Origin: Auanema rhodensis
Lineage: Eukaryota; Animalia; Nematoda
DNA: 64,000 nt
Assembly (NCBI GenBank): GCA_964057225.1
Contig: OZ059898.1
Span: 11,284,001 to 11,348,000, forward strand
Reading direction: 5' to 3'
How positions within the stretch are numbered: the first letter of the stretch is position 1; each line of letters opens with the position of its first letter. This document shows, piece by piece, positions 24,301 through 64,000 of the stretch. The position numbers and the translations under genes were made by a program. The notes beneath the pieces are model-generated. The model had not been told where the DNA came from and made no database searches. It saw only the letters and a list, made by a program, of their open reading frames with translations.

Positions 24301-26923
24301 AAACAAATTGGTTGAAAATGAAAAACATGTAATGGGACACATAGAGTTCAGTACACGTGCATCATGATGTTCTTAGGATATATAGATCTTCTGACGCAAA
24401 AAATAAGAACAAGGAGCTTTGAAATATAATGATGTTGAGAGTCTTTCGAGAATATGCAGAGTAAGACAAGAAAAAACTTTGAGGTACATACACATCTCAT
24501 ATATATATATTTTTCTTATGAATTTAATATTATATGATGTGTGATCACGTTAAAAACAGATATGAAAAACATAAAATTCGGCAAGATATGACAGTAAAAG
24601 ATAAAATGAACAAACTTTATTCAAATATTCATAGATTTACTATCACTATACATAGACAATATAGATTACTTCATATATAAGTAGATAAATCTGGTTGGAT
24701 CTTGGAAATTAAAATTTACAGGCTTAGTTTTAACTATGGATATCGCATCTCTGTCTCTTCTCAATGAAACATATATGATGCATTTTCAAGAATTATTTTA
24801 TTACAATGAACTTGAGAGAAAATATTTTTAAATGTTCATATTTATATAATTTTTCAATTATTATATTGTATATTTCAGAACATTTATGTTAAATACATAT
24901 TTGTTTATGTAAATGTTAGTATGTTGACATTGTATCGAATACATGATTTTGCTGTTTTTCAACTATAATAGTCGAAAAAAAAACATATTTTAAGTTTATC
25001 TTTAATATTCAAAAAAAAAATTCAAGCATTCATTGAGAACATATAGATTAAAGGATTTCGAAAGGGCTTCGAAACTATGTATATTTGGATAGAATTATGG
25101 GGGAGGGCAGTTGATGTCTGAGGTTACACTTCAACGGATATATGGCAAGAGGATTTCCTGTTCAATGCCAAGGGTGTTGAATTCGTCTGCATTCCGAGTC
25201 TCACACCAGTACGTCATCAGCTTTCAGTGTATTCCCTATTTCGAATTTTCTATGTTTATTTTCAAATATATATTGATTTAGTAAGTTATAAAAAGTGATA
25301 GCAGGTGATCAAATAAAAATCGTTAAGAAAAACGCTCAGTTACATACATATTGGAAAATTATTCTAATATGACCTGTTTTCATTAATGAAAAATATTTTA
25401 GAAAACTAATGAATCTGTCAGATGAGCGGGGATAATATCATTACAAACAGATACAAAGTAGAGGAAACAGGTAATTAATTTAAAATTTCTAAAGACACGC
25501 AATATCTATTGTACAAAATATTCCGTGACAAAGTAACAGCGAAGGAAAAGAAAGAGAAGCGGGGAGATAACGATGGGGAAGAAGAAGTAATGAAAGAGCA
25601 GATGAGAGTCAGTTCCATTCAGGACCATTCATTTAATCATGTGCTATTGAACGTCCAACTCAATTAACAATCCAAGAATCTATAAAGCCATTCTAATTCT
25701 GAACCTAAATAAATAAAAACTTTCTATGTACAAATGTATTTAACGCGTGCTTGATTTACTCAGTTAAAAGTGTGAAATATCCGTCCAAAATAGAAGATAA
25801 AAATCATTTAAGCAACATAAGGAAAGCAGACATTTACTGAAATGTAATGAACATGGCGTAGTTGAATAAGCTAAAAAAGATGCAGAAAGAAAGGAGAAAA
25901 ATTATGTGAATCTAACAGTAAAATGACTTTTATTTGAAATCTTACATAATATTTTGCATTAATTTTTTTAATTCACCAAATATCAACGTCAAACTTACCA
26001 TTCTTTTTTGAAAACCGAATTTAAAGGTTGAATTAATTCACTAATTATATAATTTTGAAAACAAAATTGATCAGTGCTATATAGTGAAGAATAATAATAA
26101 ATGCATGCAATTATGAAATCAGAACAAATATTAAAACAGTTGAAAAAAAAAACTCGAAATACGCTAAAATGCATGGAATTGACATGGAATTGACATGATA
26201 ATACATTGATCAACAGCACTATATTTGAATTGATTTTGATAAATAAAAAAAGCAACTCTTCAGCAAGACTAAGAAAATAAAATGAAGAAATTGCTAGAAG
26301 TATAAAAACAAAAAAATCGTTTTGAAAACGAATACACAGATGGGAAATTATGTAATTGAGCATGCATACATACATATGCTAGCTATTAAAAGATAATAAT
26401 AAAAAACATTAAAAACAAAATTTTCAAATAAATTTCAGAAAAATCAGATTAATTTTAACAGAAGTATGAAAAGTAATAACAACAGTTTTCAAGGTAAAGT
26501 AGAAACGATAACGCAGAAACGAAAAATTATAATTCCAAAATTGTATATTCTGTTTATATTATTACATGATACGAAAATATGTTTGGAATGATAAATATTG
26601 AAATACTTCATACGCTAGATGAAGCTATTATCGGCCTCTACAAAAGAAACTACTTCTTTTCTAGTCTTATAAACAATCATTGTTAACGTCTAATCGTACG
26701 CATACATTAATAATGCAAAATGTTTATGATAGCACTAAGTTCGAAATCATTTACGATGCGACGGGGTAAGATTCGCGTGGATGAATTTCCAGTCATGCAT
26801 ATTTTATCAACAGCTTATCTAAACGATATACCTCGAATATGAAAGTATATACTTCATTTGAGCTTGAAACATTAAGGTCAAATGAATCTATCACTTTAAC
26901 TGTAAAGTAAAATCCTTCTACAA

Positions 26924-27005
26924 GCAGTCATGTCCGAGTGGTTAAGGAGATTGACTAGAAATCAATTGGGCTCTGCCCGCGTAGGTTCGAATCCTGCTGA
27001 CTGCG
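26924..27005 (+). tRNA. tRNA-Ser(AGA), first copy of the array (representative unit)
   Basis: GCAGTCATGTCCGAGTGGTTAAGGAGATTGACTAGAAATCAATTGGGCTCTGCCCGCGTAGGTTCGAATCCTGCTGACTGCG. Acceptor stem GCAGTCA/TGACTGC, anticodon arm ATTGA-CTAGAAA-TCAAT, long variable arm GGGC-TCT-GCCC, T-loop TTCGAAT, discriminator G. Confidence 0.98.
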
Positions 27006-27009
27006 AATA

Positions 27010-27033
27010 TTTTGCATGAGAAATCAATTTTTT
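27010..27033 (+). terminator. Pol III oligo-dT terminators of the tRNA unit (repeated in every unit)
   Basis: T4 begins 5 nt after the tRNA 3' end and a T6 run lies at 27028-27033; further T runs follow. Confidence 0.8.
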
Positions 27034-30000
27034 GATCCCTTTTGATCTTATTCCAAAAAGTACGAGATCATTGCGTCTATCACTTGAACTGTGAAGTATA
27101 TTCCCTCTACAAGCAGTCATGTCCGAGTGGTTAAGGAGATTGACTAGAAATCAATTGGGCTCTGCCCGCGTAGGTTCGAATCCTGCTGACTGCGAATATT
27201 TTGCATGAGAAATCAACTTTTTGATCCCATTTGATCTAATTCCAATAAGTACGAGAACATTGCGTCTATCACTTTAACTGTAAAGTATATTCCTTCTACA
27301 AGCAGTCATGTCCGAGTGGTTAAGGAGATTGACTAGAAATCAATTGGGCTCTGCCCGCGTAGGTTCGAATCCTGCTGACTGCGAATATTTTGCATGAGAA
27401 ATCCATTTTTTGATCCTTTTTGATCTAATTCCAATAAGTACGAGATCCTTGCGTCTATCACTTTAACTGTAAAGTATATTCCTTCTACAAGCAGTCATGT
27501 CCGAGTGGTTAAGGAGATTGACTAGAAATCAATTGGGCTCTGCCCGCGTAGGTTCGAATCCTGCTGACTGCGAATATTTTGCATGAGAAATCCATTTTTT
27601 GATCCTTTTTGATCTAATTCCAATAAGTACGAGATCATTGCGTCTATCACTTTAACTGTAAAGTATATTCCCTCTACAAGCAGTCATGTCCGAGTGGTTA
27701 AGGAGATTGACTAGAAATCAATTGGGCTCTGCCCGCGTAGGTTCGAATCCTGCTGACTGCGAATATTTTGCATGAGAAATCCATTTTTTGATCCTTTTTG
27801 ATCTAATTCCAATAAGTACGAGATCATTGCGTCTATCACTTTAACTGTAAAGTATATTCCCTCTACAAGCAGTCATGTCCGAGTGGTTAAGGAGATTGAC
27901 TAGAAATCAATTGGGCTCTGCCCGCGTAGGTTCGAATCCTGCTGACTGCGAATATTTTGCATGAGAAATCCATTTTTTGATCCTTTTTGATCTAATTCCA
28001 ATAAGTACGAGATCATGGCGTCTATCACTTTAACTGTAAAGTATATTCCTTCTACAAGCAGTCATGTCCGAGTGGTTAAGGAGATTGACTAGAAATCAAT
28101 TGGGCTCTGCCCGCGTAGGTTCGAATCCTGCTGACTGCGAATATTTTGCATGAGAAATCCATTTTTTGATCCTTTTTGATCTAATTCCAATAAGTACGAG
28201 ATCATTGCGTCTATCACTTTAACTGTAAAGTATATTCCCTCTACAAGCAGTCATGTCCGAGTGGTTAAGGAGATTGACTAGAAATCAATTGGGCTCTGCC
28301 CGCGTAGGTTCGAATCCTGCTGACTGCGAATATTTTGCATGAGAAATCAACTTTTTGATCCCATTTGATCTAATTCCAATAAGTACGAGAACATTGCGTC
28401 TATCACTTTAACTGTAAAGTATATTCCTTCTACAAGCAGTCATGTCCGAGTGGTTAAGGAGATTGACTAGAAATCAATTGGGCTCTGCCCGCGTAGGTTC
28501 GAATCCTGCTGACTGCGAATATTTTGCATGAGAAATCAATTTTTTGATCCTTTTTGATCTAATTCCAATAAGTACGAGATCATGGCGTCTATCACTTTAA
28601 CTGTAAAGTATATTCCTTCTACAAGCAGTCATGTCCGAGTGGTTAAGGAGATTGACTAGAAATCAATTGGGCTCTGCCCGCGTAGGTTCGAATCCTGCTG
28701 ACTGCGAATATTTTGCATGAGAAATGAATTTTTTGATCCCTTTTGATCTTATTCCAAAAAGTACGAGATCATTGCGTCTATCACTTGAACTGTGAAGTAT
28801 ATTCCTTCTACAAGCAGTCATGTCCGAGTGGTTAAGGAGATTGACTAGAAATCAATTGGGCTCTGCCCGCGTAGGTTCGAATCCTGCTGACTGCGAATAT
28901 TTTGCATGAGAAATCAATTTTTTGATCCTTTTTGATCTAATTCCAATAAGTACGAGATCATTGCGTCTATCACTTTAACTGTAAAGTATATTCCCTCTAC
29001 AAGCAGTCATGTCCGAGTGGTTAAGGAGATTGACTAGAAATCAATTGGGCTCTGCCCGCGTAGGTTCGAATCCTGCTGACTGCGAATATTTTGCATGAGA
29101 AATCAACTTTTTGATCCCATTTGATCTAATTCCAATAAGTACGAGAACATTGCGTCTATCACTTTAACTGTAAAGTATATTCCTTCTACAAGCAGTCATG
29201 TCCGAGTGGTTAAGGAGATTGACTAGAAATCAATTGGGCTCTGCCCGCGTAGGTTCGAATCCTGCTGACTGCGAATATTTTGCATGAGAAATCCATTTTT
29301 TGATCCTTTTTGATCTAATTCCAATAAGTACGAGATCATTGCGTCTATCACTTTAACTGTAAAGTATATTCCCTCTACAAGCAGTCATGTCCGAGTGGTT
29401 AAGGAGATTGACTAGAAATCAATTGGGCTCTGCCCGCGTAGGTTCGAATCCTGCTGACTGCGAATATTTTGCATGAGAAATCCATTTTTTGATCCTTTTT
29501 GATCTAATTCCAATAAGTACGAGATCATGGCGTCTATCACTTTAACTGTAAAGTATATTCCTTCTACAAGCAGTCATGTCCGAGTGGTTAAGGAGATTGA
29601 CTAGAAATCAATTGGGCTCTGCCCGCGTAGGTTCGAATCCTGCTGACTGCGAATATTTTGCATGAGAAATCCATTTTTTGATCCTTTTTGATCTAATTCC
29701 AATAAGTACGAGATCATTGCGTCTATCACTTTAACTGTAAAGTATATTCCCTCTACAAGCAGTCATGTCCGAGTGGTTAAGGAGATTGACTAGAAATCAA
29801 TTGGGCTCTGCCCGCGTAGGTTCGAATCCTGCTGACTGCGAATATTTTGCATGAGAAATCAACTTTTTGATCCCATTTGATCTAATTCCAATAAGTACGA
29901 GAACATTGCGTCTATCACTTTAACTGTAAAGTATATTCCTTCTACAAGCAGTCATGTCCGAGTGGTTAAGGAGATTGACTAGAAATCAATTGGGCTCTGC

Positions 30001-32818
30001 CCGCGTAGGTTCGAATCCTGCTGACTGCGAATATTTTGCATGAGAAATCCATTTTTTGATCCTTTTTGATCTAATTCCAATAAGTACGAGATCCTTGCGT
30101 CTATCACTTGAACTGTGAAGTATATTCCTTCTACAAGCAGTCATGTCCGAGTGGTTAAGGAGATTGACTAGAAATCAATTGGGCTCTGCCCGCGTAGGTT
30201 CGAATCCTGCTGACTGCGAATATTTTGCATGAGAAATCAATTTTTTGATCCTTTTTGATCTAATTCCAATAAGTACGAGATCATGGCGTCTATCACTTTA
30301 ACTGTAAAGTATATTCCTTCTACAAGCAGTCATGTCCGAGTGGTTAAGGAGATTGACTAGAAATCAATTGGGCTCTGCCCGCGTAGGTTCGAATCCTGCT
30401 GACTGCGAATATTTTGCATGAGAAATGAATTTTTTGATCCCTTTTGATCTTATTCCAAAAAGTACGAGATCATTGCGTCTATCACTTGAACTGTGAAGTA
30501 TATTCCTTCTACAAGCAGTCATGTCCGAGTGGTTAAGGAGATTGACTAGAAATCAATTGGGCTCTGCCCGCGTAGGTTCGAATCCTGCTGACTGCGAATA
30601 TTTTGCATGAGAAATCAATTTTTTGATCCTTTTTGATCTAATTCCAATAAGTACGAGATCATTGCGTCTATCACTTTAACTGTAAAGTATATTCCCTCTA
30701 CAAGCAGTCATGTCCGAGTGGTTAAGGAGATTGACTAGAAATCAATTGGGCTCTGCCCGCGTAGGTTCGAATCCTGCTGACTGCGAATATTTTGCATGAG
30801 AAATCAACTTTTTGATCCCATTTGATCTAATTCCAATAAGTACGAGAACATTGCGTCTATCACTTTAACTGTAAAGTATATTCCTTCTACAAGCAGTCAT
30901 GTCCGAGTGGTTAAGGAGATTGACTAGAAATCAATTGGGCTCTGCCCGCGTAGGTTCGAATCCTGCTGACTGCGAATATTTTGCATGAGAAATCAATTTT
31001 TTGATCCTTTTTGATCTAATTCCAATAAGTACGAGATCATTGCGTCTATCACTTTAACTGTAAAGTATATTCCCTCTACAAGCAGTCATGTCCGAGTGGT
31101 TAAGGAGATTGACTAGAAATCAATTGGGCTCTGCCCGCGTAGGTTCGAATCCTGCTGACTGCGAATATTTTGCATGAGAAATCCATTTTTTGATCCTTTT
31201 TGATCTAATTCCAATAAGTACGAGATCATTGCGTCTATCACTTTAACTGTAAAGTATATTCCCTCTACAAGCAGTCATGTCCGAGTGGTTAAGGAGATTG
31301 ACTAGAAATCAATTGGGCTCTGCCCGCGTAGGTTCGAATCCTGCTGACTGCGAATATTTTGCATGAGAAATCAATTTTTTGATCCTTTTTGATCTAATTC
31401 CAATAAGTACGAGATCATTGCGTCTATCACTTTAACTGTAAAGTATATTCCCTCTACAAGCAGTCATGTCCGAGTGGTTAAGGAGATTGACTAGAAATCA
31501 ATTGGGCTCTGCCCGCGTAGGTTCGAATCCTGCTGACTGCGAATATTTTGCATGAGAAATCCATTTTTTGATCCTTTTTGATCTAATTCCAATAAGTACG
31601 AGAACATTGCGTCTATCACTTTAACTGTAAAGTATATTCCTTCTACAAGCAGTCATGTCCGAGTGGTTAAGGAGATTGACTAGAAATCAATTGGGCTCTG
31701 CCCGCGTAGGTTCGAATCCTGCTGACTGCGAATATTTTGCATGAGAAATCCATTTTTTGATCCTTTTTGATCTAATTCCAATAAGTACGAGATCATGGCG
31801 TCTATCACTTTAACTGTAAAGTATATTCCCTCTACAAGCAGTCATGTCCGAGTGGTTAAGGAGATTGACTAGAAATCAATTGGGCTCTGCCCGCGTAGGT
31901 TCGAATCCTGCTGACTGCGAATATTTTGCATGAGAAATCCATTTTTTGATCCTTTTTGATCTAATTCCAATAAGTACGAGATCATGGCGTCTATCACTTT
32001 AACTGTAAAGTATATTCCTTCTACAAGCAGTCATGTCCGAGTGGTTAAGGAGATTGACTAGAAATCAATTGGGCTCTGCCCGCGTAGGTTCGAATCGTGC
32101 TGACTGCGAATATTTTGCATGAGAAATCAACTTTTTGATCACATTTGATCTAATTCCAATAAGTACGAGATCATTGCGTCTATCACTTTAACTGTAAAGT
32201 ATATTCCTTCTACAAGCAGTCATGTCCGAGTGGTTAAGGAGATTGACTAGAAATCAATTGGGCTCTGCCCGCGTAGGTTCGAATCCTGCTGACTGCGAAT
32301 ATTTTGCATGAGAAATCAATTTTTTGATCCTTTTTGATCTAATTCCAATAAGTACGAGATCATGGCGTCTATCACTTTAACTGTAAAGTATATTCCTTCT
32401 GCAAGCAGTCATGTCCGAGTGGTTAAGGAGATTGACTAGAAATCAATTGGGCTCTGCCCGCGTAGGTTCGGGGTGGCGGACGTTTCGTCGTCTCTAGTTT
32501 GTGAACTAGTTCAGGCTGATCATTAGAGGGCAAACTTTATGATAATGTGCTGACAAGTGCCAGTGTTCATGTAACTCGGGGTGCTATTAAAGCTATAAAT
32601 CTATAGAATTCAGTTATAAGTGGCTACATACCTTGAAGTGCCATCAAAATATAAATTGAAAAAAGCAGAAATTAAAATAAACATACAGTTCTATCAACCA
32701 GGCTATCATCAAACAGTTTCAAGTCAACAGTTACGTGAGTTCATAGTAATAGTTGTTAGTTTATCTTTTCTTTCGATAAGTTTGCTTATTCACACTTTCT
32801 CATCTTTTCTCGTTCATC

Positions 32819-34885
32819 ATGATTTTTCCTTCTACTTTCTGTCCATTTTCTCTGATGATTAACGCTCAGGGTAAATCTGTTCTTGTTTCTCAGCCTTTTG
32901 ATAATGTTCCTTCGGAGAACATAACTATCTTTTTTAATAATTCTTCGGTAAATACTCAGAATCTTGAAGTTTATTCAAATGATGTAACTTCACTCTCATT
33001 TTTGAATTTCACTCTTCCATCTTTTAATATCCCTCCATTGAGGCAGCAAAATGTTAATTTTGCTTCTGCTCTTTCTCTAGCAAATTCATCTGCGGCATCT
33101 TCTTCAGTTGAATCTGTTGCTACAGTTACTGTTCCTACTGTCAACAGCGTTCCACTGTTCTCTTCTTCTACTTCACATCTTTCTATTCAGCCTTCTTCTT
33201 CTTCTTCTGCCGTTCATTCTTCACCGTCATCTTCTCTTTCTTCTTCTCCTCCTTCTGTTTCCTCTCCTTCTTTACCTGTTCTCTCTCCTTCTTCTTCTGT
33301 TCCCTCTCCTTCTTCTTCTGTTCCCTCTCCTTCTTCTTCTGTTCCCTCTCCTTCTTCTTCTGTTCCCTCTCCTTCTTCTTCATTTTCTTCGCAATCTGCA
33401 AATCCTAACTCATACGCCGCTCTCATTGCGCCTTCTAAGCAGGGTGTACACCCCTGTTTAGAATATAAATTTGAAAACTTGCTGTATCGCTACCAATTCA
33501 GTAGTAAAAGTTCTCAAAAAGCTTATTCTATTTATCGTTGCACAGGTTGTAAACATTTGGGTAAATACACTTCTATCAAAGTAGAAAATAATGTATTTCT
33601 CGAAAATCCTATTGCTCAAAACTATCATTGTGATCCATTTTTGTTTTCTATTAACAAATGCAAAAATATCACATACTCTCTAACTCAGAATATCAAAAGT
33701 TCAGACTCATGTTTTGAGATGAAAGCATATTCCTTATTTGTCAATGAAATAAAAAAAATATTTCATGAATCTGAGTTAGAAGAGCATGAAAAGCAAGAAG
33801 TTACCTCTGCTTGGTTTCATGGTGGCTATGACAGTAGACGTAGAGCTATTACAAGGGCTTTAAGTTCTCGTAAAGACTTAAGAACATCCATGACCAATGT
33901 TCCTCTGTCTCTGTCTAAAACTATCAATGGTCGTACGTTCTTGCATTTTCATGACAGCGAGTTTCATTTGTATTTCGATACATTTTGTTTGGAACTAGCT
34001 GTTCAGCATGGTTTAACTCATTTGCTTGGGGACGGTTGTTTCAAATACCAGCCTTTGGATATGGAACAAACATATACCATCATGGGCGGTTGCAGAAATG
34101 GAACAACTGTACCTCTTTTCTATTCCATTTTAAAAAATAAGAGTAGGTTCACTTATAGAAGGCTTCTTCAACATATTGCACTAGCTCTCTCCAACGTTGG
34201 TTGCATAGTTGAAAACCTTATTTTTATCTGTGATTTTGAGATCGCTGTAATAAGGGAAGCTGAAACTATTTTTAATTCTGTTCAAGGATGTGCATTTCAT
34301 TATGCTCAGAGCTTGAACAGACGGTCTCTTCAACTGGGTTTGACACAAGCAGAGAAGCAATCCATTGAAATCAAACAATGGCATGGTCGGCTGCTGGGCT
34401 TGCTCTTCCTTCAAACTGATCTTATCTCACGGTCCGGGTTACTCAATTCTCCTGTTTCTTCTGATCATCCATCATATTCTTCTTGTCTTCAAATGATCAG
34501 TTATGTGAATGAAACATGGATTGAAGGACCTTTGCGACATTATTGGAACAAATGGGACATAAAACAGTTTCGTACATCTAATAATGTTGAATCTTTTCAC
34601 CGTAAAATGAAGACTATTTTATCTTGCTCTCATCCTCCTCTTTCTGAATTAATTACTTTTTTTCATGGTGAAAATTTGATGGCTAATCATGTCCTGATCG
34701 CTTTGTCATCGAATGTTGAGCCTGCCAGGAAAAAAAGAAAAAACGTAATTGAGAGGCAACAACGGATTGAGGTTCAGTTTGAAAACTTTAGGAGCATCTC
34801 CAATAACCGACTGCCTAATCAGCAAGAAATAATAGCATATGTCGAGGAGATGGCGAAGTTTAACACCAGAAAATCTTATTTTTGA
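32819..34885 (+). CDS. MULE DDE transposase with Ser/Pro-rich N-terminus (688 aa)
   Basis: Catalytic motifs GDGCF (D), CDFE (D), GCAFHY (CxxH), RTSNNVESFH (E); upstream YRCTGC...HC zinc-binding-like motif; basic RKKRK. True start codon uncertain. Confidence 0.9.
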   Translation: MIFPSTFCPFSLMINAQGKSVLVSQPFDNVPSENITIFFNNSSVNTQNLEVYSNDVTSLSFLNFTLPSFNIPPLRQQNVNFASALSLANSSAASSSVESVATVTVPTVNSVPLFSSSTSHLSIQPSSSSSAVHSSPSSSLSSSPPSVSSPSLPVLSPSSSVPSPSSSVPSPSSSVPSPSSSVPSPSSSFSSQSANPNSYAALIAPSKQGVHPCLEYKFENLLYRYQFSSKSSQKAYSIYRCTGCKHLGKYTSIKVENNVFLENPIAQNYHCDPFLFSINKCKNITYSLTQNIKSSDSCFEMKAYSLFVNEIKKIFHESELEEHEKQEVTSAWFHGGYDSRRRAITRALSSRKDLRTSMTNVPLSLSKTINGRTFLHFHDSEFHLYFDTFCLELAVQHGLTHLLGDGCFKYQPLDMEQTYTIMGGCRNGTTVPLFYSILKNKSRFTYRRLLQHIALALSNVGCIVENLIFICDFEIAVIREAETIFNSVQGCAFHYAQSLNRRSLQLGLTQAEKQSIEIKQWHGRLLGLLFLQTDLISRSGLLNSPVSSDHPSYSSCLQMISYVNETWIEGPLRHYWNKWDIKQFRTSNNVESFHRKMKTILSCSHPPLSELITFFHGENLMANHVLIALSSNVEPARKKRKNVIERQQRIEVQFENFRSISNNRLPNQQEIIAYVEEMAKFNTRKSYF
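33284..33381 (+). repeat. Coding 21-bp minisatellite TCTCCTTCTTCTTCTGTTCCC (SPSSSVP), about 4.7 units
   Basis: Directly visible; copy 2 has one unit fewer (36713-36789). Confidence 0.95.
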
Positions 34886-35124
34886 ATCATTTAACTTGAA
34901 AAACTAAACTCTAATAAATTTTTTGAACCATATCTTTTTTTTCTAACACAAAAACCTCCTTGCCGTTTAGATTGAAAACCTTGATTTTTTATGAACTGTT
35001 TAAGTTTTTGGGTAATTTTTAGAAGTCTAAACGACCAAAAACTGAGAGTACAACACGTGTGGTATAATTTACGACCGTTATGTTTGCTGGGGAGAGGTTG
35101 TAAAAATAGGAGACGACGAAACGT

Positions 35125-35899
35125 CTCTGCCCGCGTAGGTTCGAATCCTGCTGACTGCGAATATTTTGCATGAGAAATCAACTTTTTGATCCCATTTGAT
35201 CTAATTTCAATAAGTACGAGATCATTGCGTCTATCACTTTAACTGTAAAGTATATTCCTTCTACAAGCAGTCATGTCCGAGTGGTTAAGGAGATTGACTA
35301 GAAATCAATTGGGCTCTGCCCGCGTAGGTTCGAATCCTGCTGACTGCGAATATTTTGCATGATAAATCAATTTTTTGATGCTTTTTGATCTAATTCCTAT
35401 ATGTACGAAATCATTGCGTCTATCACTTTAACTGTAAAGTATATTCCTTCTACAAGCAGTCATGTCCGAGTGGTTAAGGAGATTGACTAGAAATCAATTG
35501 GGCTCTGCCCGCGTAGGTTCGAATCCTGCTGACTGCGAATATTTTGCATGATAAATCAATTTTTTGATCCTTTTTGATCTTATTCCAAAAAGTACGAGAT
35601 CATTGCGTCTATCACTTGAACTGTATAGTATATTCCTTCTACAAGCAGTCATGTCCGAGTGGTTAAGGAGATTGACTAGAAATCAATTGGGCTCTGCCCG
35701 CGTAGGTTCGAATCCTGCTGACTGCGAATATTTTGCATGAGAAATCAATTTTTTGATCCTTTTTGATCTAATTCCAATAAGTACGAGATCATGGCGTCTA
35801 TCACTTTAACTGTAAAGTATATTCCTTCTGCAAGCAGTCATGTCCGAGTGGTTAAGGAGATTGACTAGAAATCAATTGGGCTCTGCCCGCGTAGGTTCG
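35125..35899 (+). repeat. tRNA-Ser(AGA) array block B: 3' fragment, 3 full-length genes, 5' fragment
   Basis: Fragment nt 48-82 at 35125-35159; full genes start at 35267, 35456 and 35645; fragment nt 1-66 at 35834-35899. Confidence 0.95.
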
Positions 35900-38541
35900 G
35901 GGTGGCGGACGTTTCGTCGTCTCTAGTTTGTGAACTAGTTCAGGCTGATCATTAGAGGGCAAACTTTATGATAATGTGCTGACAAGTGTCAGTGTTCATG
36001 TAACTCGGGGTGCTATTAAAGCTATAAATCTATAGAATTCAGTTATAAGTGGCTACATACCTTGAAGTGCCATCAAAATATAAATTGAAAAAAGCAGAAA
36101 TTAAAATAAACATACAGTTCTATCAACCAGGCTATCATCAAACAGTTTCAAGTCAACAGTTACGTGAGTTCATAGTAATAGTTGTTAGTTTATCTTTTCT
36201 TTCGATAAGTTTGCTTATTCACACTTTCTCATCTTTTCTCGTTCATCATGATTTTTCCTTCTACTTTCTGTCCATTTTCTCTGATGATTAACGCTCAGGG
36301 TAAATCTGTTCTTGTTTCTCAGCCTTTTGATAATGTTCCTTCGGAGAACATAACTATCTTTTTTAATAATTCTTCGGTAAATACTCAGAATCTTGAAGTT
36401 TATTCAAATGATGTAACTTCACTCTCATTTTTGAATTTCACTCTTCCATCTTTTAATATCCCTCCATTGAGGCAGCAAAATGTTAATTTTGCTTCTGCTC
36501 TTTCTCTAGCAAATTCATCTGCGGCATCTTCTTCAGTTGAATCTGTTGCTACAGTTACTGTTCCTACTGTCAACAGCGTTCCACTGTTCTCTTCTTCTAC
36601 TTCACATCTTTCTATTCAGCCTTCTTCTTCTTCTTCTGCCGTTCATTCTTCACCGTCATCTTCTCTTTCTTCTTCTCCTCCTTCTGTTTCCTCTCCTTCT
36701 TTACCTGTTCTCTCTCCTTCTTCTTCTGTTCCCTCTCCTTCTTCTTCTGTTCCCTCTCCTTCTTCTTCTGTTCCCTCTCCTTCTTCTTCATTTTCTTCGC
36801 AATCTGCAAATCCTAACTCATACGCCGCTCTCATTGCGCCTTCTAAGCAGGGTGTACACCCCTGTTTAGAATATAAATTTGAAAACTTGCTGTATCGCTA
36901 CCAATTCAGTAGTAAAAGTTCTCAAAAAGCTTATTCTATTTATCGTTGCACAGGTTGTAAACATTTGGGTAAATACACTTCTATCAAAGTAGAAAATAAT
37001 GTATTTCTCGAAAATCCTATTGCTCAAAACTATCATTGTGATCCATTTTTGTTTTCTATTAACAAATGCAAAAATATCACATACTCTCTAACTCAGAATA
37101 TCAAAAGTTCAGACTCATGTTTTGAGATGAAAGCATATTCCTTATTTGTCAATGAAATAAAAAAAATATTTCATGAATCTGAGTTAGAAGAGCATGAAAA
37201 GCAAGAAGTTTCCTCTGCTTGGTTTCATGGTGGCTATGACAGTAGACGTAGAGCTATTACAAGGGCTTTAAGTTCTCGTAAAGACTTAAGAACATCCATG
37301 ACCAATGTTCCTCTGTCTCTGTCTAAAACTATCAATGGTCGTACGTTCTTGCATTTTCATGACAGCGAGTTTCATTTGTATTTCGATACATTTTGTTTGG
37401 AACTAGCTGTTCAGCATGGTTTAACTCATTTGCTTGGGGACGGTTGTTTCAAATACCAGCCTTTGGATATGGAACAAACATATACCATCATGGGCGGTTG
37501 CAGAAATGGAACAACTGTACCTCTTTTCTATTCCATTTTAAAAAATAAGAGTAGGTTCACTTATAGAAGGCTTCTTCAACATATTGCACTAGCTCTCTCC
37601 AACGTTGGTTGCATAGTTGAAAACCTTATTTTTATCTGTGATTTTGAGATCGCTGTAATAAGGGAAGCTGAAACTATTTTTAATTCTGTTCAAGGATGTG
37701 CATTTCATTATGCTCAGAGCTTGAACAGACGGTTTCTTCAACTGGGTTTGACACAAGCAGAGAAGCAATCCATTGAAATCAAACAATGGCATGGTCGGCT
37801 GCTGGGCTTGCTCTTCCTTCAAACTGATCTTATCTCACGGTCCGGGTTACTCAATTCTCCTGTTTCTTCTGATCATCCATCATATTCTTCTTGTCTTCAA
37901 ATGATCAGTTATGTGAATGAAACATGGATTGAAGGACCTTTGCGACATTATTGGAGCAAATGGGACATAAAACAGTTTCGTACATCTAATAATGTTGAAT
38001 CTTTTCACCGTAAAATGAAGACTATTTTATCTTGCTCTCATCCTCCTCTTTCTGAATTAATTACTTTTTTTCATGGTGAAAATTTGATGGCTAATCATGT
38101 CCTGATCGCTTTGTCATCGAATGTTGAGCCTGCCAGGAAAAAAAGAAAAAACGTAATTGAGAGGCAACAACGGATTGAGGTTCAGTTTGAAAACTTTAGG
38201 AGCATCTCCAATAACCGACTGCCTAATCAGCAAGAAATAATAGCATATGTCGAGGAGATGGCGAAGTTTAACACCAGAAAATCTTATTTTTGAATCATTT
38301 AACTTGAAAAACTAAACTCTAATAAATTTTTTGAACCATACCTTTTTTTTCTAACACAAAAACCTCCTTGCCGTTTAGATTGAAAACCTTGATTTTTTAT
38401 GAACTGTTTAAGTTTTTGGGTAATTTTTAGAAGTCTAAACGACCAAAAACTGAGAGTACAACACGTGTGGTATAATTTACGACCGTTAGGCTTGCTGGGG
38501 AGAGGTTGTAAAAATAGGAGACGACGAAACGTCTCAGACCC
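35900..38541 (+). mobile_element. Mutator/MULE DNA transposon, copy 2 (2642 bp, both 24-bp TIRs present)
   Basis: Left GGGTGGCGGACGTTTCGTCGTCTC versus reverse complement of the right end GGGTCTGAGACGTTTCGTCGTCTC (20/24 identical). No TSD because the two flanks are tRNA fragments of opposite orientation. Confidence 0.93.
36248..38293 (+). CDS. MULE DDE transposase (681 aa)
   Basis: Same motifs as copy 1; differs by a 7-aa repeat indel and T>S, S>F, N>S substitutions. Confidence 0.9.
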   Translation: MIFPSTFCPFSLMINAQGKSVLVSQPFDNVPSENITIFFNNSSVNTQNLEVYSNDVTSLSFLNFTLPSFNIPPLRQQNVNFASALSLANSSAASSSVESVATVTVPTVNSVPLFSSSTSHLSIQPSSSSSAVHSSPSSSLSSSPPSVSSPSLPVLSPSSSVPSPSSSVPSPSSSVPSPSSSFSSQSANPNSYAALIAPSKQGVHPCLEYKFENLLYRYQFSSKSSQKAYSIYRCTGCKHLGKYTSIKVENNVFLENPIAQNYHCDPFLFSINKCKNITYSLTQNIKSSDSCFEMKAYSLFVNEIKKIFHESELEEHEKQEVSSAWFHGGYDSRRRAITRALSSRKDLRTSMTNVPLSLSKTINGRTFLHFHDSEFHLYFDTFCLELAVQHGLTHLLGDGCFKYQPLDMEQTYTIMGGCRNGTTVPLFYSILKNKSRFTYRRLLQHIALALSNVGCIVENLIFICDFEIAVIREAETIFNSVQGCAFHYAQSLNRRFLQLGLTQAEKQSIEIKQWHGRLLGLLFLQTDLISRSGLLNSPVSSDHPSYSSCLQMISYVNETWIEGPLRHYWSKWDIKQFRTSNNVESFHRKMKTILSCSHPPLSELITFFHGENLMANHVLIALSSNVEPARKKRKNVIERQQRIEVQFENFRSISNNRLPNQQEIIAYVEEMAKFNTRKSYF

Positions 38542-41500
38542 CTCGGACATGACTGCTTGTAGAAGGAATATACTTTACAGTTAAAGTGATAGACGCAATG
38601 ATGTCGTACTTTTTGGAATAAGATCAAAAAGGATCAAAAAATTGATTTATCATGCAAAATATTCGCAGTCAGCAGGATTCGAACCTACGCGGGCAGAGCC
38701 CAATTGATTTCTAGTAAATCTCCTTAACCACTCGGACATGACTGCTTGTTGAAGGAATATACTTTACAGTTAAAGTGATAGACGCAATGATCTCGTACTT
38801 TTTGGAATAAGATCAAAAGGGATCAAAAAATTGAATTCTCATGCAAAATATTCGCAGTCAGCAGGATTCGAACCTACGCGGGCAGAGCCCAATTGATTTC
38901 TAGTCAATCTCCTTAACCACTCGGACATGACTGCTTGTAGAAGGAATATACTTTACAGTGAAAGTGATAGACGCAATGATCTCGTACTTTTTGGAATAAG
39001 ATCAAAAGGGATCAAAAAATTGATTTCTCATGCAAAATATTCGCAGTCAGCAGGATTCGAACCTACGCGGGCAGAGCCCAATTGATTTCTAGTCAATCTC
39101 CTTAACCACTCGGACATGACTGCTTGTAGAAGGAATATACTTCACAGTTAAAGTGATAGACGCAATGATCTCGTACTTATTGGAATTAGATCAAAAAGCA
39201 TCAAAAAAATGATTTCTCATGCAAAATATTCGCAGTCAGCACGATTCGAACCTACGCGGGCAGAGCCCAATTGATTTCTAGTCAATCTCCTTAACCACTC
39301 GGACATGACTGCTTGTAGAAGGAATATACTTCACAGTTAAAGTGATAGACGCAATGATTTCGTACATATTTGAATTAGATCAAAAAGCATCAAAAAATTG
39401 ATTTCTCATGCAAAATATTCGCAGTCAGCAGGATTCGAACCTACGCGGGCAGAGCCCAATTGATTTCTAGTCAATCTCCTTAACCACTCGGACATGACTG
39501 CTTGTAGAAGGAATATACTTTACAGTTGAACTGATAGACGCAATGATTTCGTACATATAGGAATTAGATCAAAAAGCATCAAAAAATTGATTTATCATGC
39601 AAAATATTCGCAGTCAGCAGGATTCGAACCTACGCGGGCAGAGCCCAATTGATTTCTAGTCAATCTCCTTAACCACTCGGACATGACTGCTTGTAGAAGG
39701 AATATACTATACAGTTCAAGTGATAGACGCAATGATCTCGCACTTTTTGGAATAAGATCAAAAAGGATCAAAAAATTGATTTATCATGCAAAATATTCGC
39801 AGTCAGCAGGATTCGAACCTACGCGGGCAGAGCCCAATTGATTTCTAGTCAATCTCCTTAACCACTCGGACATGACTGCTTGTAGAAGGAATATACTTTA
39901 CAGTTAAAGTGATAGACGCAATGATTTCGTACATATAGGAATTAGATCAAAAAGCATCAAAAAATTGATTTATCATGCAAAATATTCGCAGTCAGCAGGA
40001 TTCGAACCTACGCGGGCAGAGCCCAATTGATTTCTAGTCAATCTCCTTAACCACTCGGACATGACTGCTTGTAGAAGGAATATACTATACAGTTCAAGTG
40101 ATAGACGCAATGATCTCGTACTTTTTGGAATAAGATCAAAAAGGATCAAAAAATTGATTTATCATGCAAAATATTCGCAGTCAGCAGGATTCGAACCTAC
40201 GCGGGCAGAGCCCAATTGATTTCTAGTCAATCTCCTTAACCACTCGGACATGACTGCTTGTAGAAGGAATATACTTTACAGTTAAAGTGATAGACGCAAT
40301 GATTTCGTACATATAGGAATTAGATCAAAAAGCATCAAAAAATTGATTTATCATGCAAAATATTCGCAGTCAGCAGGATTCGAACCTACGCGGGCAGAGC
40401 CCAATTGATTTCTAGTCAATCTCCTTAACCACTCGGACATGACTGCTTGTAGAAGGAATATACTTTACAGTTAAAGTGATAGACGCAATGATCTCGTACT
40501 TTTTGGAATAACATCAAAAAGGATCAAAAAATTGATTTATCATGCAAAATATTCGCAGTCAGCAGGATTCGAACCTACGCGGGCAGAGCCCAATTGATTT
40601 CTAGTAAATCTCCTTAACCACTCGGACATGACTGCTTGTAGAAGGAATATACTTTACAGTTAAAGTGATAGACGCAATGATCTCGTACTTTTTGGAATAA
40701 GATCAAAAGGGATCAAAAAATTGAATTCTCATGCAAAATATTCGCAGTCAGCAGGATTCGAACCTACGCGGGCAGAGCCCAATTGATTTCTAGTCAATCT
40801 CCTTAACCACTCGGACATGACTGCTTGTAGAAGGAATATACTTTACAGTTAAAGTGATAGACGCAATGATCTCGTACTTTTTGGAATTAGATCAAAAGGG
40901 ATCAAAAAATTGATTTATCATGCAAAATATTCGCAGTCAGCAGGATTCGAACATACGCGGGCAGAGCCCAATTGATTTCTAGTCAATCTCCTTAACCACT
41001 CGGACATGACTGCTTGTAGAAGGAATATACTTTACAGTTAAAGTGATAGACGCAATGATTTCGTACTTTTTGGAATAAGATCAAAAAGGATCAAAAAATT
41101 GATTTATCATGCAAAATATTCGCAGTCAGCAGGATTCGAACATACGCGGGCAGAGCCCAATTGATTTCTAGTCAATCTCCTTAACCACTCGGACATGACT
41201 GCTTGTAGAAGGAATATACTTTACAGTTAAAGTGATAGACGCAATGATTTCGTACATATAGGAATTAGATCAAAAAGCATCAAAAAATTGATTTATCATG
41301 CAAAATATTCGCAGTCAGCAGGATTCGAACCTACGCGGGCAGAGCCCAATTGATTTCTAGTCAATCTCCTTAACCACTCGGACATGACTGCTTGTAGAAG
41401 GAATATACTGTAAAGTTAAAGTGATAGACGCAATGATCTCGTACTTTTTGGAATAAGATCAAATGGGATCAAAAAATTGATTTGTCATGCAAAATATTCG

Positions 41501-41909
41501 CAGTCAGCAGGATTCGAACCTACGCGGGCAGAGCCCAATTGATTTCTAGTCAATCTCCTTAACCACTCGGACATGACTGCTTGTAGAAGGAATATACTTT
41601 ACAGTTGAAGTGATAGACGCAATGATTTCGTACATATTTGAATTAGATCAAAAAGCATCAAAAAATTGATTTCTCATGCAAAATATTCGCAGTCAGCAGG
41701 ATTCGAACCTACGCGGGCAGAGCCCAATTGATTTCTAGTCAATCTCCTTAACCACTCGGACATGACTGCTTGTAGAAGGAATATACTTTACAGTTAAAGT
41801 GATAGACGCAATGATGTCGTACTTTTTGGAATAAGATCAAAAGGGATCAAAAAATTCATTTCTCATGCAAAATATTCGCAGTCAGCAGGATTCGAACCTA
41901 CGCGGGCAG
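38542..41909 (-). repeat. tRNA-Ser(AGA) array block C (inverted): 17 full-length genes plus two fragments
   Basis: Fragment nt 1-15 at 38542-38556; full genes at 38664-38745 +189n; fragment 41877-41909 cut by the BEL element. Confidence 0.96.
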
Positions 41910-42100
41910 TATCGCGAATGCGATTATTGCGGCATTGATCTTGCTGGTCCACAATCCCCGACATAGAACTCAGTGAACTGCCCACTCATTTACGATCCAG
42001 GCGAGACTGCATAGATCGGTTAAACAACATTCAGAAAAGACTTGACAAATTTTGGCAACGATGGCATAATGAATATGTCGTCGCCCTTCGAGCAACACAC

Positions 42101-44956
42101 ATGTTGGATCACAAGCAGGGACATTTCTCCACAGCTACACCAAAAGTAGGCACAGTAGTGCTAATATCAGATGACAATACGAAACGAAACCAGTGGAAAA
42201 TGGGTTTAATAACAAGCATACAGAACACGGAATCTGTGAGAGTTGCAGAAGTCCGTACATCTGATGGACACAAACTATTTAGACCCATCAATCGCCTGAT
42301 TCCCCTTGAAATTCCTTCCGACAACGAGCATCATACGGAAAACAGGCATACGCAGTCCCCACACAAATCAGACAAAACTGTCACGTTTAAAGAACCTCCA
42401 GAGGTCATTTTACTCGATAACGAAGTATCCACCGTTGTGGAAACCAGCACATCGACCGGACCCAATACAACTGAAAACGTGATAGACCCAAACGTTATCA
42501 CTATCAACGATGATGATGACATCGAAGTGATCACCATTGCAGATGATGAAGGTGAAAATGAACCACAACCTCGAAAACGACGACGTCTCCCCAGTTACAC
42601 ACATTTTTTCATAGCCATGATACTGGGTATTCTCGTCAATCCAATGTCCGCAACCAACATCTGCCAGTTCTCTTGCATCAAAGGAAGAGTAGGCATATCA
42701 AACTGCGGTACTGGACATCCCATCCGAGTTTGTGCCCGGGAAACATGTGTAGAGTACACCCCAAATACTCCCAACTTCACCATAGTATTTCCGGCTCATG
42801 TTGTATTGCATGACCACACATTCATCTCACGACATATTATCGATAAAAATGACACATTTGCATTGCATCAACTTGATTGTCCAGCAACTCCGTTTTGCGA
42901 TATGATTCAATGTCTGTTCTGTCTTGAACTACTCCACAACCCATCTTGTTTCCCATACGCAGCACTCTCGGCGACCGCACTCATCATATGGCTCATTCTA
43001 TTTAGCATTCTTTTAAGCATCATAGTCATTCGAATTTGTTCTAAAAAATTTGTTCATATTGCACAATACACCCTTTTTTCCGTTTGGCGTATGATCACTC
43101 AATGTCTCCCCTCTCATATAAGATCTCATATCTCTATTCAGGAAGAACGATCGGTACTCGAGTACGTCCCGCTCAGTTCTCACAAGCTACCTCGATGGCA
43201 GAAGTCTACACCCTCACAACGATCACGACAACGTGACCGATTAGTTCACCGAGTCGGGTATCTTTTTGTTGCAATAATCGTCATTTTTTTGATTGAATCT
43301 CTTGTAGTTAATGCATGTACTATTGTTCCTCCGAGTATATCACATGTTCCAGGCAACTCCGTCTCGAACTTATCACCTACCCACCAAGTCAACCAAGTCA
43401 GCAGCTCCACCACCCTCCATACTTACGATAATGAGGTATGTTTTACAACTTCACATTCAAACCGATCATACGCCAATCCCCTCACGAACTCACACCTGCG
43501 CATCAAACTTATGTATACACGTATACTGTGCACGAAAGTATCCTTATTTTTTACACGTCACACCATCGTAAAAACTGAATCCGCAAAACGGTGTCCCCAT
43601 ATGGGCTCTTGTGTAGGATTGTTTTGTGCGAACGTTCGACCCAATACATCAATCTCAGAACTCTCATTAGCCAACCAATATCCAGGTACCAGCTATTGTT
43701 CAGAAAGCTGTGGATTTCTATCATGCGGTTGTGCGTTGCCAACTTCTGGTTGTCTCTTCTATCGCAACTTTCATGTTCCCAATGACAATATCACCCACGA
43801 AGTTTTCTACTGCTCACGATGGACACCTAGGGTTTTTCTCCAGATTAGCATCCATACAGCTATTGCGAACAAAACTGAAACGATCTCGCACGTCCCCTTT
43901 TTACCACACTCTACAAAAGTCATTAACGGGTACCATATTACTCTTGGGAGAATAACATATTCTGATAATGAAATCCTCCATAGAAGATACATTACTTCCA
44001 ACTCGAGAATTGCAGTTTTACCTCACTCTGCTACAATTTCATACTCGTGCGGAAAAGTTAAAACCGCTGACCCATTCTCCGAATGTACTGCAACAGACAC
44101 ATGTTCATGCAGACCAGCCGAAACAGTCGAAAATTGCTATTGTCAGGACAACAATCCTAACAAGCTCTATACTAATAACTACACCCTACCATTATCTCTT
44201 CCATCTCTGACCATGATCCCAAAAAACAATCTCATTTTTGCTCATCCCATAAGCGCTGTTGACATTAAAATGTGGACAAATATCTCAGATGTCACTTATG
44301 AATACGACAATAGTCCTACTATTTGCGAGCTAAAATCCAAAGACCTAGTTGGATGTTTTGACTGTGTTACTGGAGCAACAACAATCATTACTTGCATCAG
44401 TACATCATCCCACATTCGAATTTCGTGCGACGATGAAGAATTTCTGCTTACATGCAATTCTCAGGGTTACAACAACTCTATTCGCATACAGAGCAATTTT
44501 TCAACACCGTCTATAACGTGTACTCATCCGTGTACTTCCGCCACATTACATCTCAAAGGCAACTTGTACTACGTGAACGAATACATAGGTTTTGAACAGT
44601 CCACTCATCAGATTACAAACAGTTCATTCAGTCTCCTGAACGTCGAGTTTACCATACCGAGCTTTTTTGTACCCACTCACTTAATCAACTCACTTGTTTC
44701 GTTTTACTCGGACTACCTTAAAACGATTGTAATACTATTGAGTGTTTTGATCACAGTACTCGGCTTTGTAACCGCCGTAATTGACCGCGTCTTCCAGTTG
44801 TCAAGTACACCCGCTCTCTTAGCATATTTACCCATACAAATACTTATTATCTTCGCAATTCCTTTTCGCATCATTTTTTTCACAATTCATTTGTTGTTCA
44901 AGATTGTAGTTCGAGCCAGTCATAGCGCAGTGGCTAAAGGTACACACTCTCAGTGA
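42101..44956 (+). CDS. Integrase C-terminal remnant fused to phlebovirus-like Gn/Gc envelope glycoprotein (951 aa)
   Basis: PKVGTVVLI...RNQWKMG...RPINRLIPLE (BEL pol end), signal-like segment, Cys-rich ectodomain with TM, second signal, Gc-type KRCPHMGSC...YPGTSYCSESCGFLSCGCALPTSGCLFYR, GCFDCVTGA and C-terminal TM. Confidence 0.9.
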   Translation: MLDHKQGHFSTATPKVGTVVLISDDNTKRNQWKMGLITSIQNTESVRVAEVRTSDGHKLFRPINRLIPLEIPSDNEHHTENRHTQSPHKSDKTVTFKEPPEVILLDNEVSTVVETSTSTGPNTTENVIDPNVITINDDDDIEVITIADDEGENEPQPRKRRRLPSYTHFFIAMILGILVNPMSATNICQFSCIKGRVGISNCGTGHPIRVCARETCVEYTPNTPNFTIVFPAHVVLHDHTFISRHIIDKNDTFALHQLDCPATPFCDMIQCLFCLELLHNPSCFPYAALSATALIIWLILFSILLSIIVIRICSKKFVHIAQYTLFSVWRMITQCLPSHIRSHISIQEERSVLEYVPLSSHKLPRWQKSTPSQRSRQRDRLVHRVGYLFVAIIVIFLIESLVVNACTIVPPSISHVPGNSVSNLSPTHQVNQVSSSTTLHTYDNEVCFTTSHSNRSYANPLTNSHLRIKLMYTRILCTKVSLFFTRHTIVKTESAKRCPHMGSCVGLFCANVRPNTSISELSLANQYPGTSYCSESCGFLSCGCALPTSGCLFYRNFHVPNDNITHEVFYCSRWTPRVFLQISIHTAIANKTETISHVPFLPHSTKVINGYHITLGRITYSDNEILHRRYITSNSRIAVLPHSATISYSCGKVKTADPFSECTATDTCSCRPAETVENCYCQDNNPNKLYTNNYTLPLSLPSLTMIPKNNLIFAHPISAVDIKMWTNISDVTYEYDNSPTICELKSKDLVGCFDCVTGATTIITCISTSSHIRISCDDEEFLLTCNSQGYNNSIRIQSNFSTPSITCTHPCTSATLHLKGNLYYVNEYIGFEQSTHQITNSSFSLLNVEFTIPSFFVPTHLINSLVSFYSDYLKTIVILLSVLITVLGFVTAVIDRVFQLSSTPALLAYLPIQILIIFAIPFRIIFFTIHLLFKIVVRASHSAVAKGTHSQ

Positions 44957-45093
44957 TTGATGACGGGTTCAATACCCAGTGAGTCCTCGATTTATTTTCT
45001 CGATTTCTTAGTTCCCTATCATAGCAAACGATTGTTCAATTTGATTTACACCAATCCTACACAATTTATCATTTCGCCGGGGGGAGGTATACT

Positions 45094-45513
45094 ATGTATA
45101 AAAACCATCATTATTTCAGTCTTGATAACATCAAAGAATGGAGCGATTCCCTTGATCAACTCCAGGATAACGGCAACGCAAAGATGCCTAACAAAAGTCA
45201 GAATATGTCTGCACCAAAAAAGCAGAACAACTCTAAAGTGAAGTACAGAAAAATGGAAGAAGACATGAAATGTCAACTCTGTTGGAAGAAGGGCCACACC
45301 ATGGGAAAATGCACAGTCTACAAGACTGCAGCACAACGCGTCAAGCGTTGCAAGTTGATCAACATGTGCTTGAAGTGTTTGCGGAACCACTTTGGAAAAC
45401 CGTGTGTGGAGAAGATGAAGAAAATATGTCATGTGTGCAAAGGAAGCGGACTGGACCACGATCATCCTGGTGTATTATGCAAGCTGCAGTTTGCGGAGGA
45501 ATTAGCAGAATGA
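45094..45513 (+). CDS. Stand-alone basic protein with three BEL-Gag-type Cys/His knuckles (139 aa)
   Basis: CQLCWKKGHTMGKC, CLKCLRNHFGKPC and CHVCKGSGLDHDHPGVLC in the arrangement typical of BEL/Pao nucleocapsid; lies between env and the 3' LTR. The 5' end may be spliced. Confidence 0.75.
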   Translation: MYKNHHYFSLDNIKEWSDSLDQLQDNGNAKMPNKSQNMSAPKKQNNSKVKYRKMEEDMKCQLCWKKGHTMGKCTVYKTAAQRVKRCKLINMCLKCLRNHFGKPCVEKMKKICHVCKGSGLDHDHPGVLCKLQFAEELAE

Positions 45514-45546
45514 AATCAGTTCTGATTTCTCTCTCCTGGCCCGGAA

Positions 45547-45961
45547 TATCGCGAATGCGATTATTCATCATTCAATCGATGCAATCTCATCACGTTGGCT
45601 GATGAGATTCACGGGCACTCTGTTTTATACCACCGTCGCGGACGGTCGCTTTTCTCTCTCCTCGTTGCTGTCTTTATCTTATGACTCATCTAGTCTGAAC
45701 CACCGTTTTATCCTTGTCCTTTAGTAAGACTATCTCTAGTCTCATTAGTGATGTATATCTAGTCTTATTACATTCACTCTAGTCTTCTATGTACTTTATC
45801 TAGTCTTATTATATATCTTCTAGTCCTTATATTCTGTATTATGTATATCTGAATGGCATATGAATGAATCTTTCTTCCTCTAATAGTCTTTTACGTTAAC
45901 AGGGCATAGAATAGAAAGTGTGAACCTGGGAGGCTATTTGAAAAGCCCTCTATCTTCAAAA
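45547..45961 (+). repeat. BEL/Pao 3' LTR (415 bp)
   Basis: Start defined by the 19-bp match to the element 5' end; end defined by the TSD. Confidence 0.85.
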
Positions 45962-63989: not shown

Positions 63990-64000
63990 GGTAATTGAAT

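What the first reader, a model, noticed from the sequence alone, without database searches (positions are those of the whole stretch)
32405..38556. Candidate tRNA-targeting Mutator (MULE) transposon with junctions in the Pol III B-box and A-box
Seen: a 2.64-kb element with short 24-bp imperfect TIRs (GGGT...ACCC) and an intact DDE transposase. Its left end joins tRNA nt 66 (GGTTCG|AATCC, B-box) and its intact right end joins tRNA nt 15 (TGTCCGAG|TGG, A-box). Neither junction is in the 107-bp spacer. Known: DNA transposons that target Pol III genes are rare (Dada in tRNA/snRNA genes, the MuDR-type Mutsu in fish 5S rDNA). Inference: a nematode MULE family may home to tRNA internal promoters, perhaps through TFIIIC. 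Only two independent junctions are visible, so chance is not excluded.
Basis: partly seen in the sequence, partly recalled or inferred. Interest (0 to 1): 0.85.

Follow-up and report, generated by a model that had tools for sequence, protein, structure and literature searches.

The report
Mutator transposons inside tRNA-Ser gene array
Two intact-looking copies of a Mutator-type jumping gene sit inside tRNA-Ser genes of a nematode tandem tRNA array, and one marks the point where the array flips direction; but they show only two independent landing sites, too few to prove that this family aims at tRNA genes.

Summary
The anatomy is confirmed. Two 2.64-kb MULE copies have 24-bp TIRs (20/24) and an intact D-D-CxxH-E transposase. 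Both left ends join tRNA-Ser nt 66 (B-box) and share 273 identical flanking bases, so they are one event. Copy 2's right end joins nt 15 (A-box) of a reversed tRNA, exactly where the array switches strand. Copy 1's right end is a secondary microhomology join. Targeting is not shown here. There are two junctions (P 0.19 for both in the gene body; about 0.013 for both in boxes, post hoc), the two target sites share no sequence, and a BEL/Pao element also hit a tRNA of this array. Five relatives at about 30% identity in other nematodes sit at AT-rich, non-tRNA sites. 'MuDR-type Mutsu' is wrong: Mutsu is a non-LTR retrotransposon. The scan has noted MULEs at tRNA/5S genes many times elsewhere in this genome (probably Auanema rhodense). 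If they hold, a loose Pol III-gene preference fits better than A/B-box homing. Class and interest are set on my own tests.

The parts
26887..32470 (+). tRNA-Ser(AGA) tandem array, left arm, 29.5 units of 189 bp (82-bp gene + 107-bp spacer)
32405..32470 (+). interrupted tRNA-Ser, nt 1-66, cut inside the B-box; its upstream spacer carries a private SNP found elsewhere only at 35727-35833
32471..32494 (+). copy 1 left TIR (24 bp; core 32479-32494)
32819..34885 (+). copy 1 transposase ORF, 688 aa: about 200-aa Ser/Pro-rich N-terminus, weak RYYR-CCHC-like stretch, DDE core D405/D472/CxxH491-494/E591
35110..35127 (-). copy 1 right TIR, core intact, last 6 bp replaced by tRNA sequence; CTC microhomology at 35125-35127 (tRNA nt 48-50)
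35125..35899 (+). segment between the copies: tRNA nt 48-82, three intact tRNAs, then tRNA nt 1-66; mosaic, with 35212-35740 identical to the reverse complement of 39973-40501 and 35627-35899 identical to 32198-32470
35900..35923 (+). copy 2 left TIR, same junction as copy 1
36248..38293 (+). copy 2 transposase ORF, 681 aa; one 7-aa repeat unit shorter and 3 substitutions versus copy 1; catalytic residues intact
38518..38541 (-). copy 2 right TIR, complete to the terminal base
38542..38556 (-). tRNA-Ser nt 1-15 on the minus strand, cut inside the A-box; point where the array switches strand
38542..59845 (-). tRNA-Ser(AGA) array, right arm in reverse orientation (17.8 + 73.5 units), interrupted at 41910-45961 by a BEL/Pao-derived element

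Best explanation
A young, probably autonomous cut-and-paste transposon of a clade V nematode MULE lineage. Shown: DDE/CxxH transposase with an IS256-like fold, short G-tipped TIRs, two copies 99.7% identical. Shown: both left junctions are one insertion after tRNA nt 66, duplicated together with the last array unit. Inferred: that insertion probably made an 8-9-bp duplication (about nt 58-66), and copy 1's right tip was later overwritten by tRNA sequence through a CTC microhomology. Shown: copy 2's complete right TIR is joined to nt 15 of a reversed tRNA, so an element end marks the inversion breakpoint. Inferred: the inversion came either from recombination with a second, oppositely oriented insertion (expected duplication nt 7-15) or from one-ended re-cutting of this end. 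Inferred, not shown: site choice is a loose regional preference for RNA polymerase III genes, by contact with Pol III machinery or by their nucleosome-free DNA, and not recognition of one sequence or of the A/B boxes. On this window alone I would give the preference about 0.15-0.2. The rest of my lean comes from unchecked notes of this scan, and I did not use it for class or interest.
For: Anatomy and history. Both transposase-made junctions are in the gene (43% of the unit) and in the boxes (about 11%). The two putative target 9-mers are 56% GC, whereas five relatives use AT-rich sites of 12-44% GC, so site choice differs from the clade's usual one. The two targets share no motif and the TIRs do not mimic the unit, which argues against sequence-specific choice. 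Leads only: notes on other pieces of this genome place MULEs at tRNA 5' ends, A-box, T-arm and 5S nt 7-15.
Against: n=2, possibly 1 at array level. The window was chosen because the element is in an array. A BEL/Pao element (tRNA nt 50-54) and a gypsy element (about 30 bp upstream of a tRNA) also hit this array. Relatives in Cylicocyclus, Diploscapter and Cooperia have no tRNA or 5S within 5-6 kb of the gene in 8 of 8 loci (one contig ends 1.2 kb after the gene). Maize Mu shows no enrichment at tRNA/rRNA genes (PMC7337890). No second genome or read set could be examined.
Confidence: 0.45

Rival explanations
1. No targeting. An ordinary MULE landed in a highly redundant tRNA array, where insertions cost nothing and persist; the second junction is a local rearrangement, and both falling in boxes is chance.
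For: P=0.19 for two junctions in the gene body. The array takes 23.6 of 64 kb and also holds two LTR-type elements. The likely host has 19,554 tRNA genes (bioRxiv 10.64898/2026.08.27.747507). All relatives with definable ends use non-Pol III sites. No Pol III-targeted MULE was found in the papers searched, so the prior is low.
Against: Both junctions in the boxes is about 1 in 75, although post hoc. tRNA gene bodies would be only about 0.8% of that genome (assuming 75 bp each), while satellites are far larger and at least as neutral.
Confidence: 0.38
2. One reading: the transposase homes to the tRNA internal promoter boxes by binding TFIIIC.
For: Both junctions lie within the A-box and B-box. 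Dada insertions also cluster at the A-box (PMC8869645).
Against: n=2. From general knowledge, bound TFIIIC would shield the boxes, and known Pol III-tethered elements (Ty1, Ty3) insert at or upstream of the start site. Unchecked notes place related elements at 5S nt 7-15 and at tRNA 5' ends, outside the boxes.
Confidence: 0.1
3. Dada-like sequence-specific insertion at a fixed tRNA position.
For: Dada-tL_DR shows similar mismatched flanks, explained by one-ended transposition (PMC3706591).
Against: Two different positions and orientations, no shared target motif, true TIRs (Dada has none), and MULE rather than Dada by Pfam and relatives.
Confidence: 0.03
4. The duplication or the strand switch is an assembly error in a repeat array.
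For: Tandem array; reads could not be checked.
Against: The copies differ by 7 substitutions and a 21-bp repeat unit. The strand switch falls exactly on the last base of a TIR. The spacer variants are diverse and locally ordered.
Confidence: 0.04

Closest known systems
Clade V nematode MULEs (Cylicocyclus nassatus CAJ0606035.1 family, Diploscapter pachys PAV90262.1, Cooperia, Ancylostoma)
   Same: 30-33% identical transposase; one clade at SH-aLRT 99; short G-tipped TIRs in the same register (GGGTGAGT-GAC versus GGGTGGCG-GAC; one end of L006 starts with the same nine bases as the left TIR here); 8-10-bp duplications.
   Different: They sit at AT-rich sites with no tRNA or 5S nearby; the window protein is on its own long branch.
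Dada superfamily (PMC3706591, PMC8869645)
   Same: C/DxxH-type DDE transposase; insertion inside tRNA genes including the A-box; copies with mismatched flanks.
   Different: Dada has no TIRs, makes 6-7-bp duplications, and each family uses one fixed site; this element has TIRs and two unlike sites.
MuTAnT (Medicago MULE, PMC4486113; abstract only)
   Same: A Mutator-like family with a narrow target preference for a harmless repeat.
   Different: Targets TA microsatellites, not Pol III genes.
Maize Mu/MuDR
   Same: Superfamily, chemistry, long duplications.
   Different: Long TIRs; prefers Pol II start sites and is not enriched at tRNA/rRNA genes (PMC7337890).
Ty1/Ty3 and Mutsu retrotransposons
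   Same: Insert at Pol III genes; Ty1 and Ty3 do so by protein tethering (PMC7337890 and its references).
   Different: Retroelements. Mutsu is a sequence-specific LINE in fish 5S genes (PMC5340908), not MuDR-type.
ISCth4 (IS256 family) transposase, PDB 6XGX/6XG8/6XGW
   Same: Best structural match of the predicted model, E 5.5e-5.
   Different: Bacterial; about 10% identity and low TM-score (0.22-0.32).

Membership tests
Mutator/MULE superfamily | DDE transposase with C/DxxH motif, MULE domain | tested here: met
   PF10551 E 1.3e-5 (just under the cut-off); D405, D472, CAFH, E591 align with named MULE proteins; IS256-type fold is the top hit
Mutator/MULE superfamily | terminal inverted repeats (14-500 bp, PMC6446971) | tested here: met
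   24 bp, 20/24 matched
Mutator/MULE superfamily | 8-11-bp target-site duplication | tested here: inconclusive
   No intact pair here: copy 1 shows a 16-19-bp duplication with a lost tip, copy 2 has unlike flanks; relatives show 8-10 bp
Dada | no terminal inverted repeats | tested here: not met
   TIRs present
Dada | one fixed target position per family with 6-7-bp duplication | tested here: not met
   junctions at nt 66 and nt 15, opposite orientation, no shared motif
Dada | transposase groups with Dada proteins | not tested
   no Dada sequence was available by reference; the nearest relatives are nematode MULEs
Pol III gene-targeting element | most independent insertions at Pol III genes, against a genome-wide null | not testable with these tools
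Pol III gene-targeting element | junctions enriched in the gene or boxes within the array unit | tested here: inconclusive
   2 of 2; P=0.19 for the gene, about 0.013 for the boxes, post hoc
Pol III gene-targeting element | habit shared by relatives | tested here: not met
   0 of 8 loci of relatives at about 30% identity near a tRNA or 5S gene

The most novel reading that the evidence does not exclude
A Mutator lineage in this nematode has evolved its own targeting to RNA polymerase III genes (tRNA, perhaps 5S), position-loose and probably by protein tethering. It would be the first TIR cut-and-paste family with a Ty3-like habit, exploiting a genome with about 20,000 arrayed tRNA genes and reshaping the arrays by end-mediated inversions.
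Probability: 0.45. Interest if true: 0.72.

Novelty: new member of a known kind. Interest (0 to 1): 0.45.

Why it matters
Among eukaryotic DNA transposons, only Dada is reported to aim at small-RNA genes, and it does so by sequence; maize Mu is indifferent to Pol III genes. A Mutator lineage that newly prefers them, while its relatives do not, would be a natural experiment on how a transposase gains a targeting habit, and a lead for safe-harbour insertion tools. Whatever the targeting answer, this locus shows a DNA transposon end sitting exactly at an orientation switch of a tRNA gene array, one way such arrays are rearranged.

Tried and rejected
Word-index protein searches found nothing, the exact protein is not on record, and metagenome scans by protein and by TIR found nothing. 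The exhaustive search found only relatives at about 30% identity. Rejected: three or four independent junctions (the left flanks are identical for 273 bp with a private SNP; copy 1's right end is tRNA-derived). Rejected: reading copy 1's right end as a mutated TIR plus an 11-bp duplication (its seven bases match the tRNA exactly). Rejected: TIR mimicry of the target (longest shared run 5 bp, reached by 98% of shuffles). No internal B-box and no consensus splice acceptor in the element. Rejected: the right arm as a recent mirror copy of the left arm (different length and spacer variants). Mutsu as a precedent rejected. The tree is the quick version, without bootstrap. The host species was not tested directly; the preprint's supplements are not held.

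Full report
Setting. The window holds AT-rich single-copy DNA up to 26.9 kb, then a tandem array of 189-bp units, each an 82-nt tRNA-Ser(AGA) plus a 107-bp spacer. There are 122 intact genes: on the plus strand to 35.9 kb, on the minus strand from 38.5 to 59.8 kb. The transposase's relatives are all from clade V nematodes. I guessed Auanema from the arrays. A 2026 preprint reports 19,554 tRNA genes and tRNA/5S/U2 arrays in a 180.9-Mb A. rhodense assembly and does not mention MULEs (10.64898/2026.08.27.747507). Earlier notes of the scan name the same species. I did not test the species myself.

The element. Copy 1 is 32471-35127 and copy 2 is 35900-38541. They differ by 7 substitutions and one 21-bp unit of the Ser/Pro repeat. 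The ORFs (688 and 681 aa) hit PF10551 at E 1.3e-5. D405, D472, C491-x-x-H494 and E591 align with the conserved columns of relatives and are intact in both copies. The predicted model (pLDDT 86) matches the IS256-family ISCth4 transposase best. The N-terminal 200 codons are open in this frame while the other two frames have 9 and 12 stops, so they are probably translated. The TIRs are 24 bp, 20/24 matched, with a perfect 16-bp core. It is a MULE, on a long branch in a supported clade with Diploscapter and strongylid elements.

The junctions. Both left ends follow tRNA nt 66, inside the B-box. The flanks are identical for 273 bp and carry a spacer SNP seen in no other unit, so this is one insertion, duplicated. 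Copy 1's right end matches the intact TIR up to CTC and then continues as tRNA from nt 48-50, the only CTC on that strand of the unit. That is a secondary, microhomology-based join. It lies 7-10 bp from where an 8-9-bp duplication would start, which fits an original clean insertion whose tip was overwritten, but does not prove it. Copy 2's right TIR is complete and joins nt 15 of a minus-strand tRNA, inside the A-box, at the exact point where the array changes strand. A join at the terminal base points to the transposase.

History. The 775 bp between the copies are a mosaic: 81 bp like left-arm units, 529 bp identical to the reverse complement of 39973-40501 in the right arm, and 273 bp identical to copy 1's left flank. 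Unequal exchange, plus conversion between the inverted arms or template switching, explains this; I cannot order the steps. For the inversion there are two routes. One is recombination between this element and a second insertion in opposite orientation: 6 of 7 substitutions lie in the right half, which hints at a hybrid copy 2, but P=0.125. The other is one-ended transposition, as proposed for Dada-tL_DR. The first route means two full insertions in the array, the second only one. The far breakpoint lies beyond the window or under the gypsy element at 59.85 kb.

Is it targeted? Within a unit, two junctions fall in the gene with P=0.19 and in the boxes with P about 0.013, but the boxes were picked after the fact. 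The putative target 9-mers (nt 58-66 and nt 7-15) share no motif, and the TIRs resemble the unit no more than shuffles do, so Dada-like sequence recognition is unlikely. A BEL/Pao-derived element sits in a tRNA of the same array at nt 50-54 with a 5-bp duplication, and a gypsy element about 30 bp upstream of a tRNA, so the array collects several classes. I fetched eight loci of the nearest relatives; none has a tRNA or 5S gene nearby. Five have definable ends, G-tipped like these, with 8-10-bp duplications at AT-rich sites. Any preference is therefore not ancestral and would be new in this lineage.

Earlier notes. The scan has recorded MULEs in or at tRNA-Glu, -Gln, -Arg, -His and 5S genes on other pieces of this genome, and two follow-ups state that the family lands almost only at Pol III genes. 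Other notes put BEL/Pao and Maverick elements at 5S genes too. I checked none of these, they are subject to the same selection as this finding, and they need not be the same family. They raise my personal estimate for a loose Pol III preference from about 0.15-0.2 to about 0.45. If right, they point away from box-specific homing, since 5S nt 7-15 and tRNA 5' ends are not boxes. Class and interest rest on my own tests.

Comparison. Dada targets tRNA genes, often at the A-box, but lacks TIRs and uses fixed sites. Maize Mu is not enriched at tRNA genes. MuTAnT shows that a MULE can evolve a narrow target. I found no paper on a Pol III-targeted MULE; the library lacks most subscription papers.

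Verdict. The feature is real: a new, intact-looking nematode MULE family whose end marks an array inversion. Targeting is plausible, not shown here, and if present more likely regional than A/B-box-specific. Interest 0.45; about 0.7 if the genome-wide count confirms it.

Noticed in passing
window 41910-45961: BEL/Pao-derived element lacking gag/pol: 951-aa ORF with a DUF5641 remnant and a phlebovirus-G2-like fusion domain, inserted in a tRNA-Ser at nt 50-54 with a 5-bp duplication. Its first 19 bases repeat at 45547 inside the probable LTR and it ends in a short A run, as a copied spliced RNA might.
   Followed up: partly
window 45094-45513: 139-aa Cys/His-rich ORF with no Pfam hit, starting at the probable LTR start just after a purine tract.
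   Followed up: no
window 59844-64000: Gypsy-type element on the minus strand (RT, RNase H, integrase) ends the array about 30 bp upstream of a tRNA start, near where TFIIIB would sit; single case.
   Followed up: partly
window 33059-33418: The Ser-rich tract uses TCT, the codon read by the host tRNA-Ser(AGA), in 45 of 55 Ser codons. The rest of the ORF uses it in 30 of 59, against 8 of 40 and 22 of 97 in the two retroelement ORFs. Repeat slippage explains the tract; the ORF-wide bias is unexplained.
   Followed up: partly
window 35212-35740 and 39973-40501: Exact 529-bp match between the two inverted arms, evidence of recent exchange across the strand switch.
   Followed up: yes
window 26887-59845: tRNA genes are almost invariant while spacers carry many variants; left and right arms have largely different variant pools, with runs of higher-order repeats in the right arm.
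   Followed up: partly
L001 4783-8382 and L003 10511-14102: Two 98% identical, complete 3.6-kb MULE copies in Cylicocyclus nassatus with subterminal repeats and poly-C right tips: a probably recently active family annotated as host genes.
   Followed up: partly
L002 2835-5923: Near-perfect 1.08-kb inverted duplication just upstream of a Cylicocyclus MULE gene.
   Followed up: no
L005 8594-8638: Histone 3' stem-loop-like match inside a Cylicocyclus MULE with 263-bp TIRs; possibly a captured fragment.
   Followed up: no
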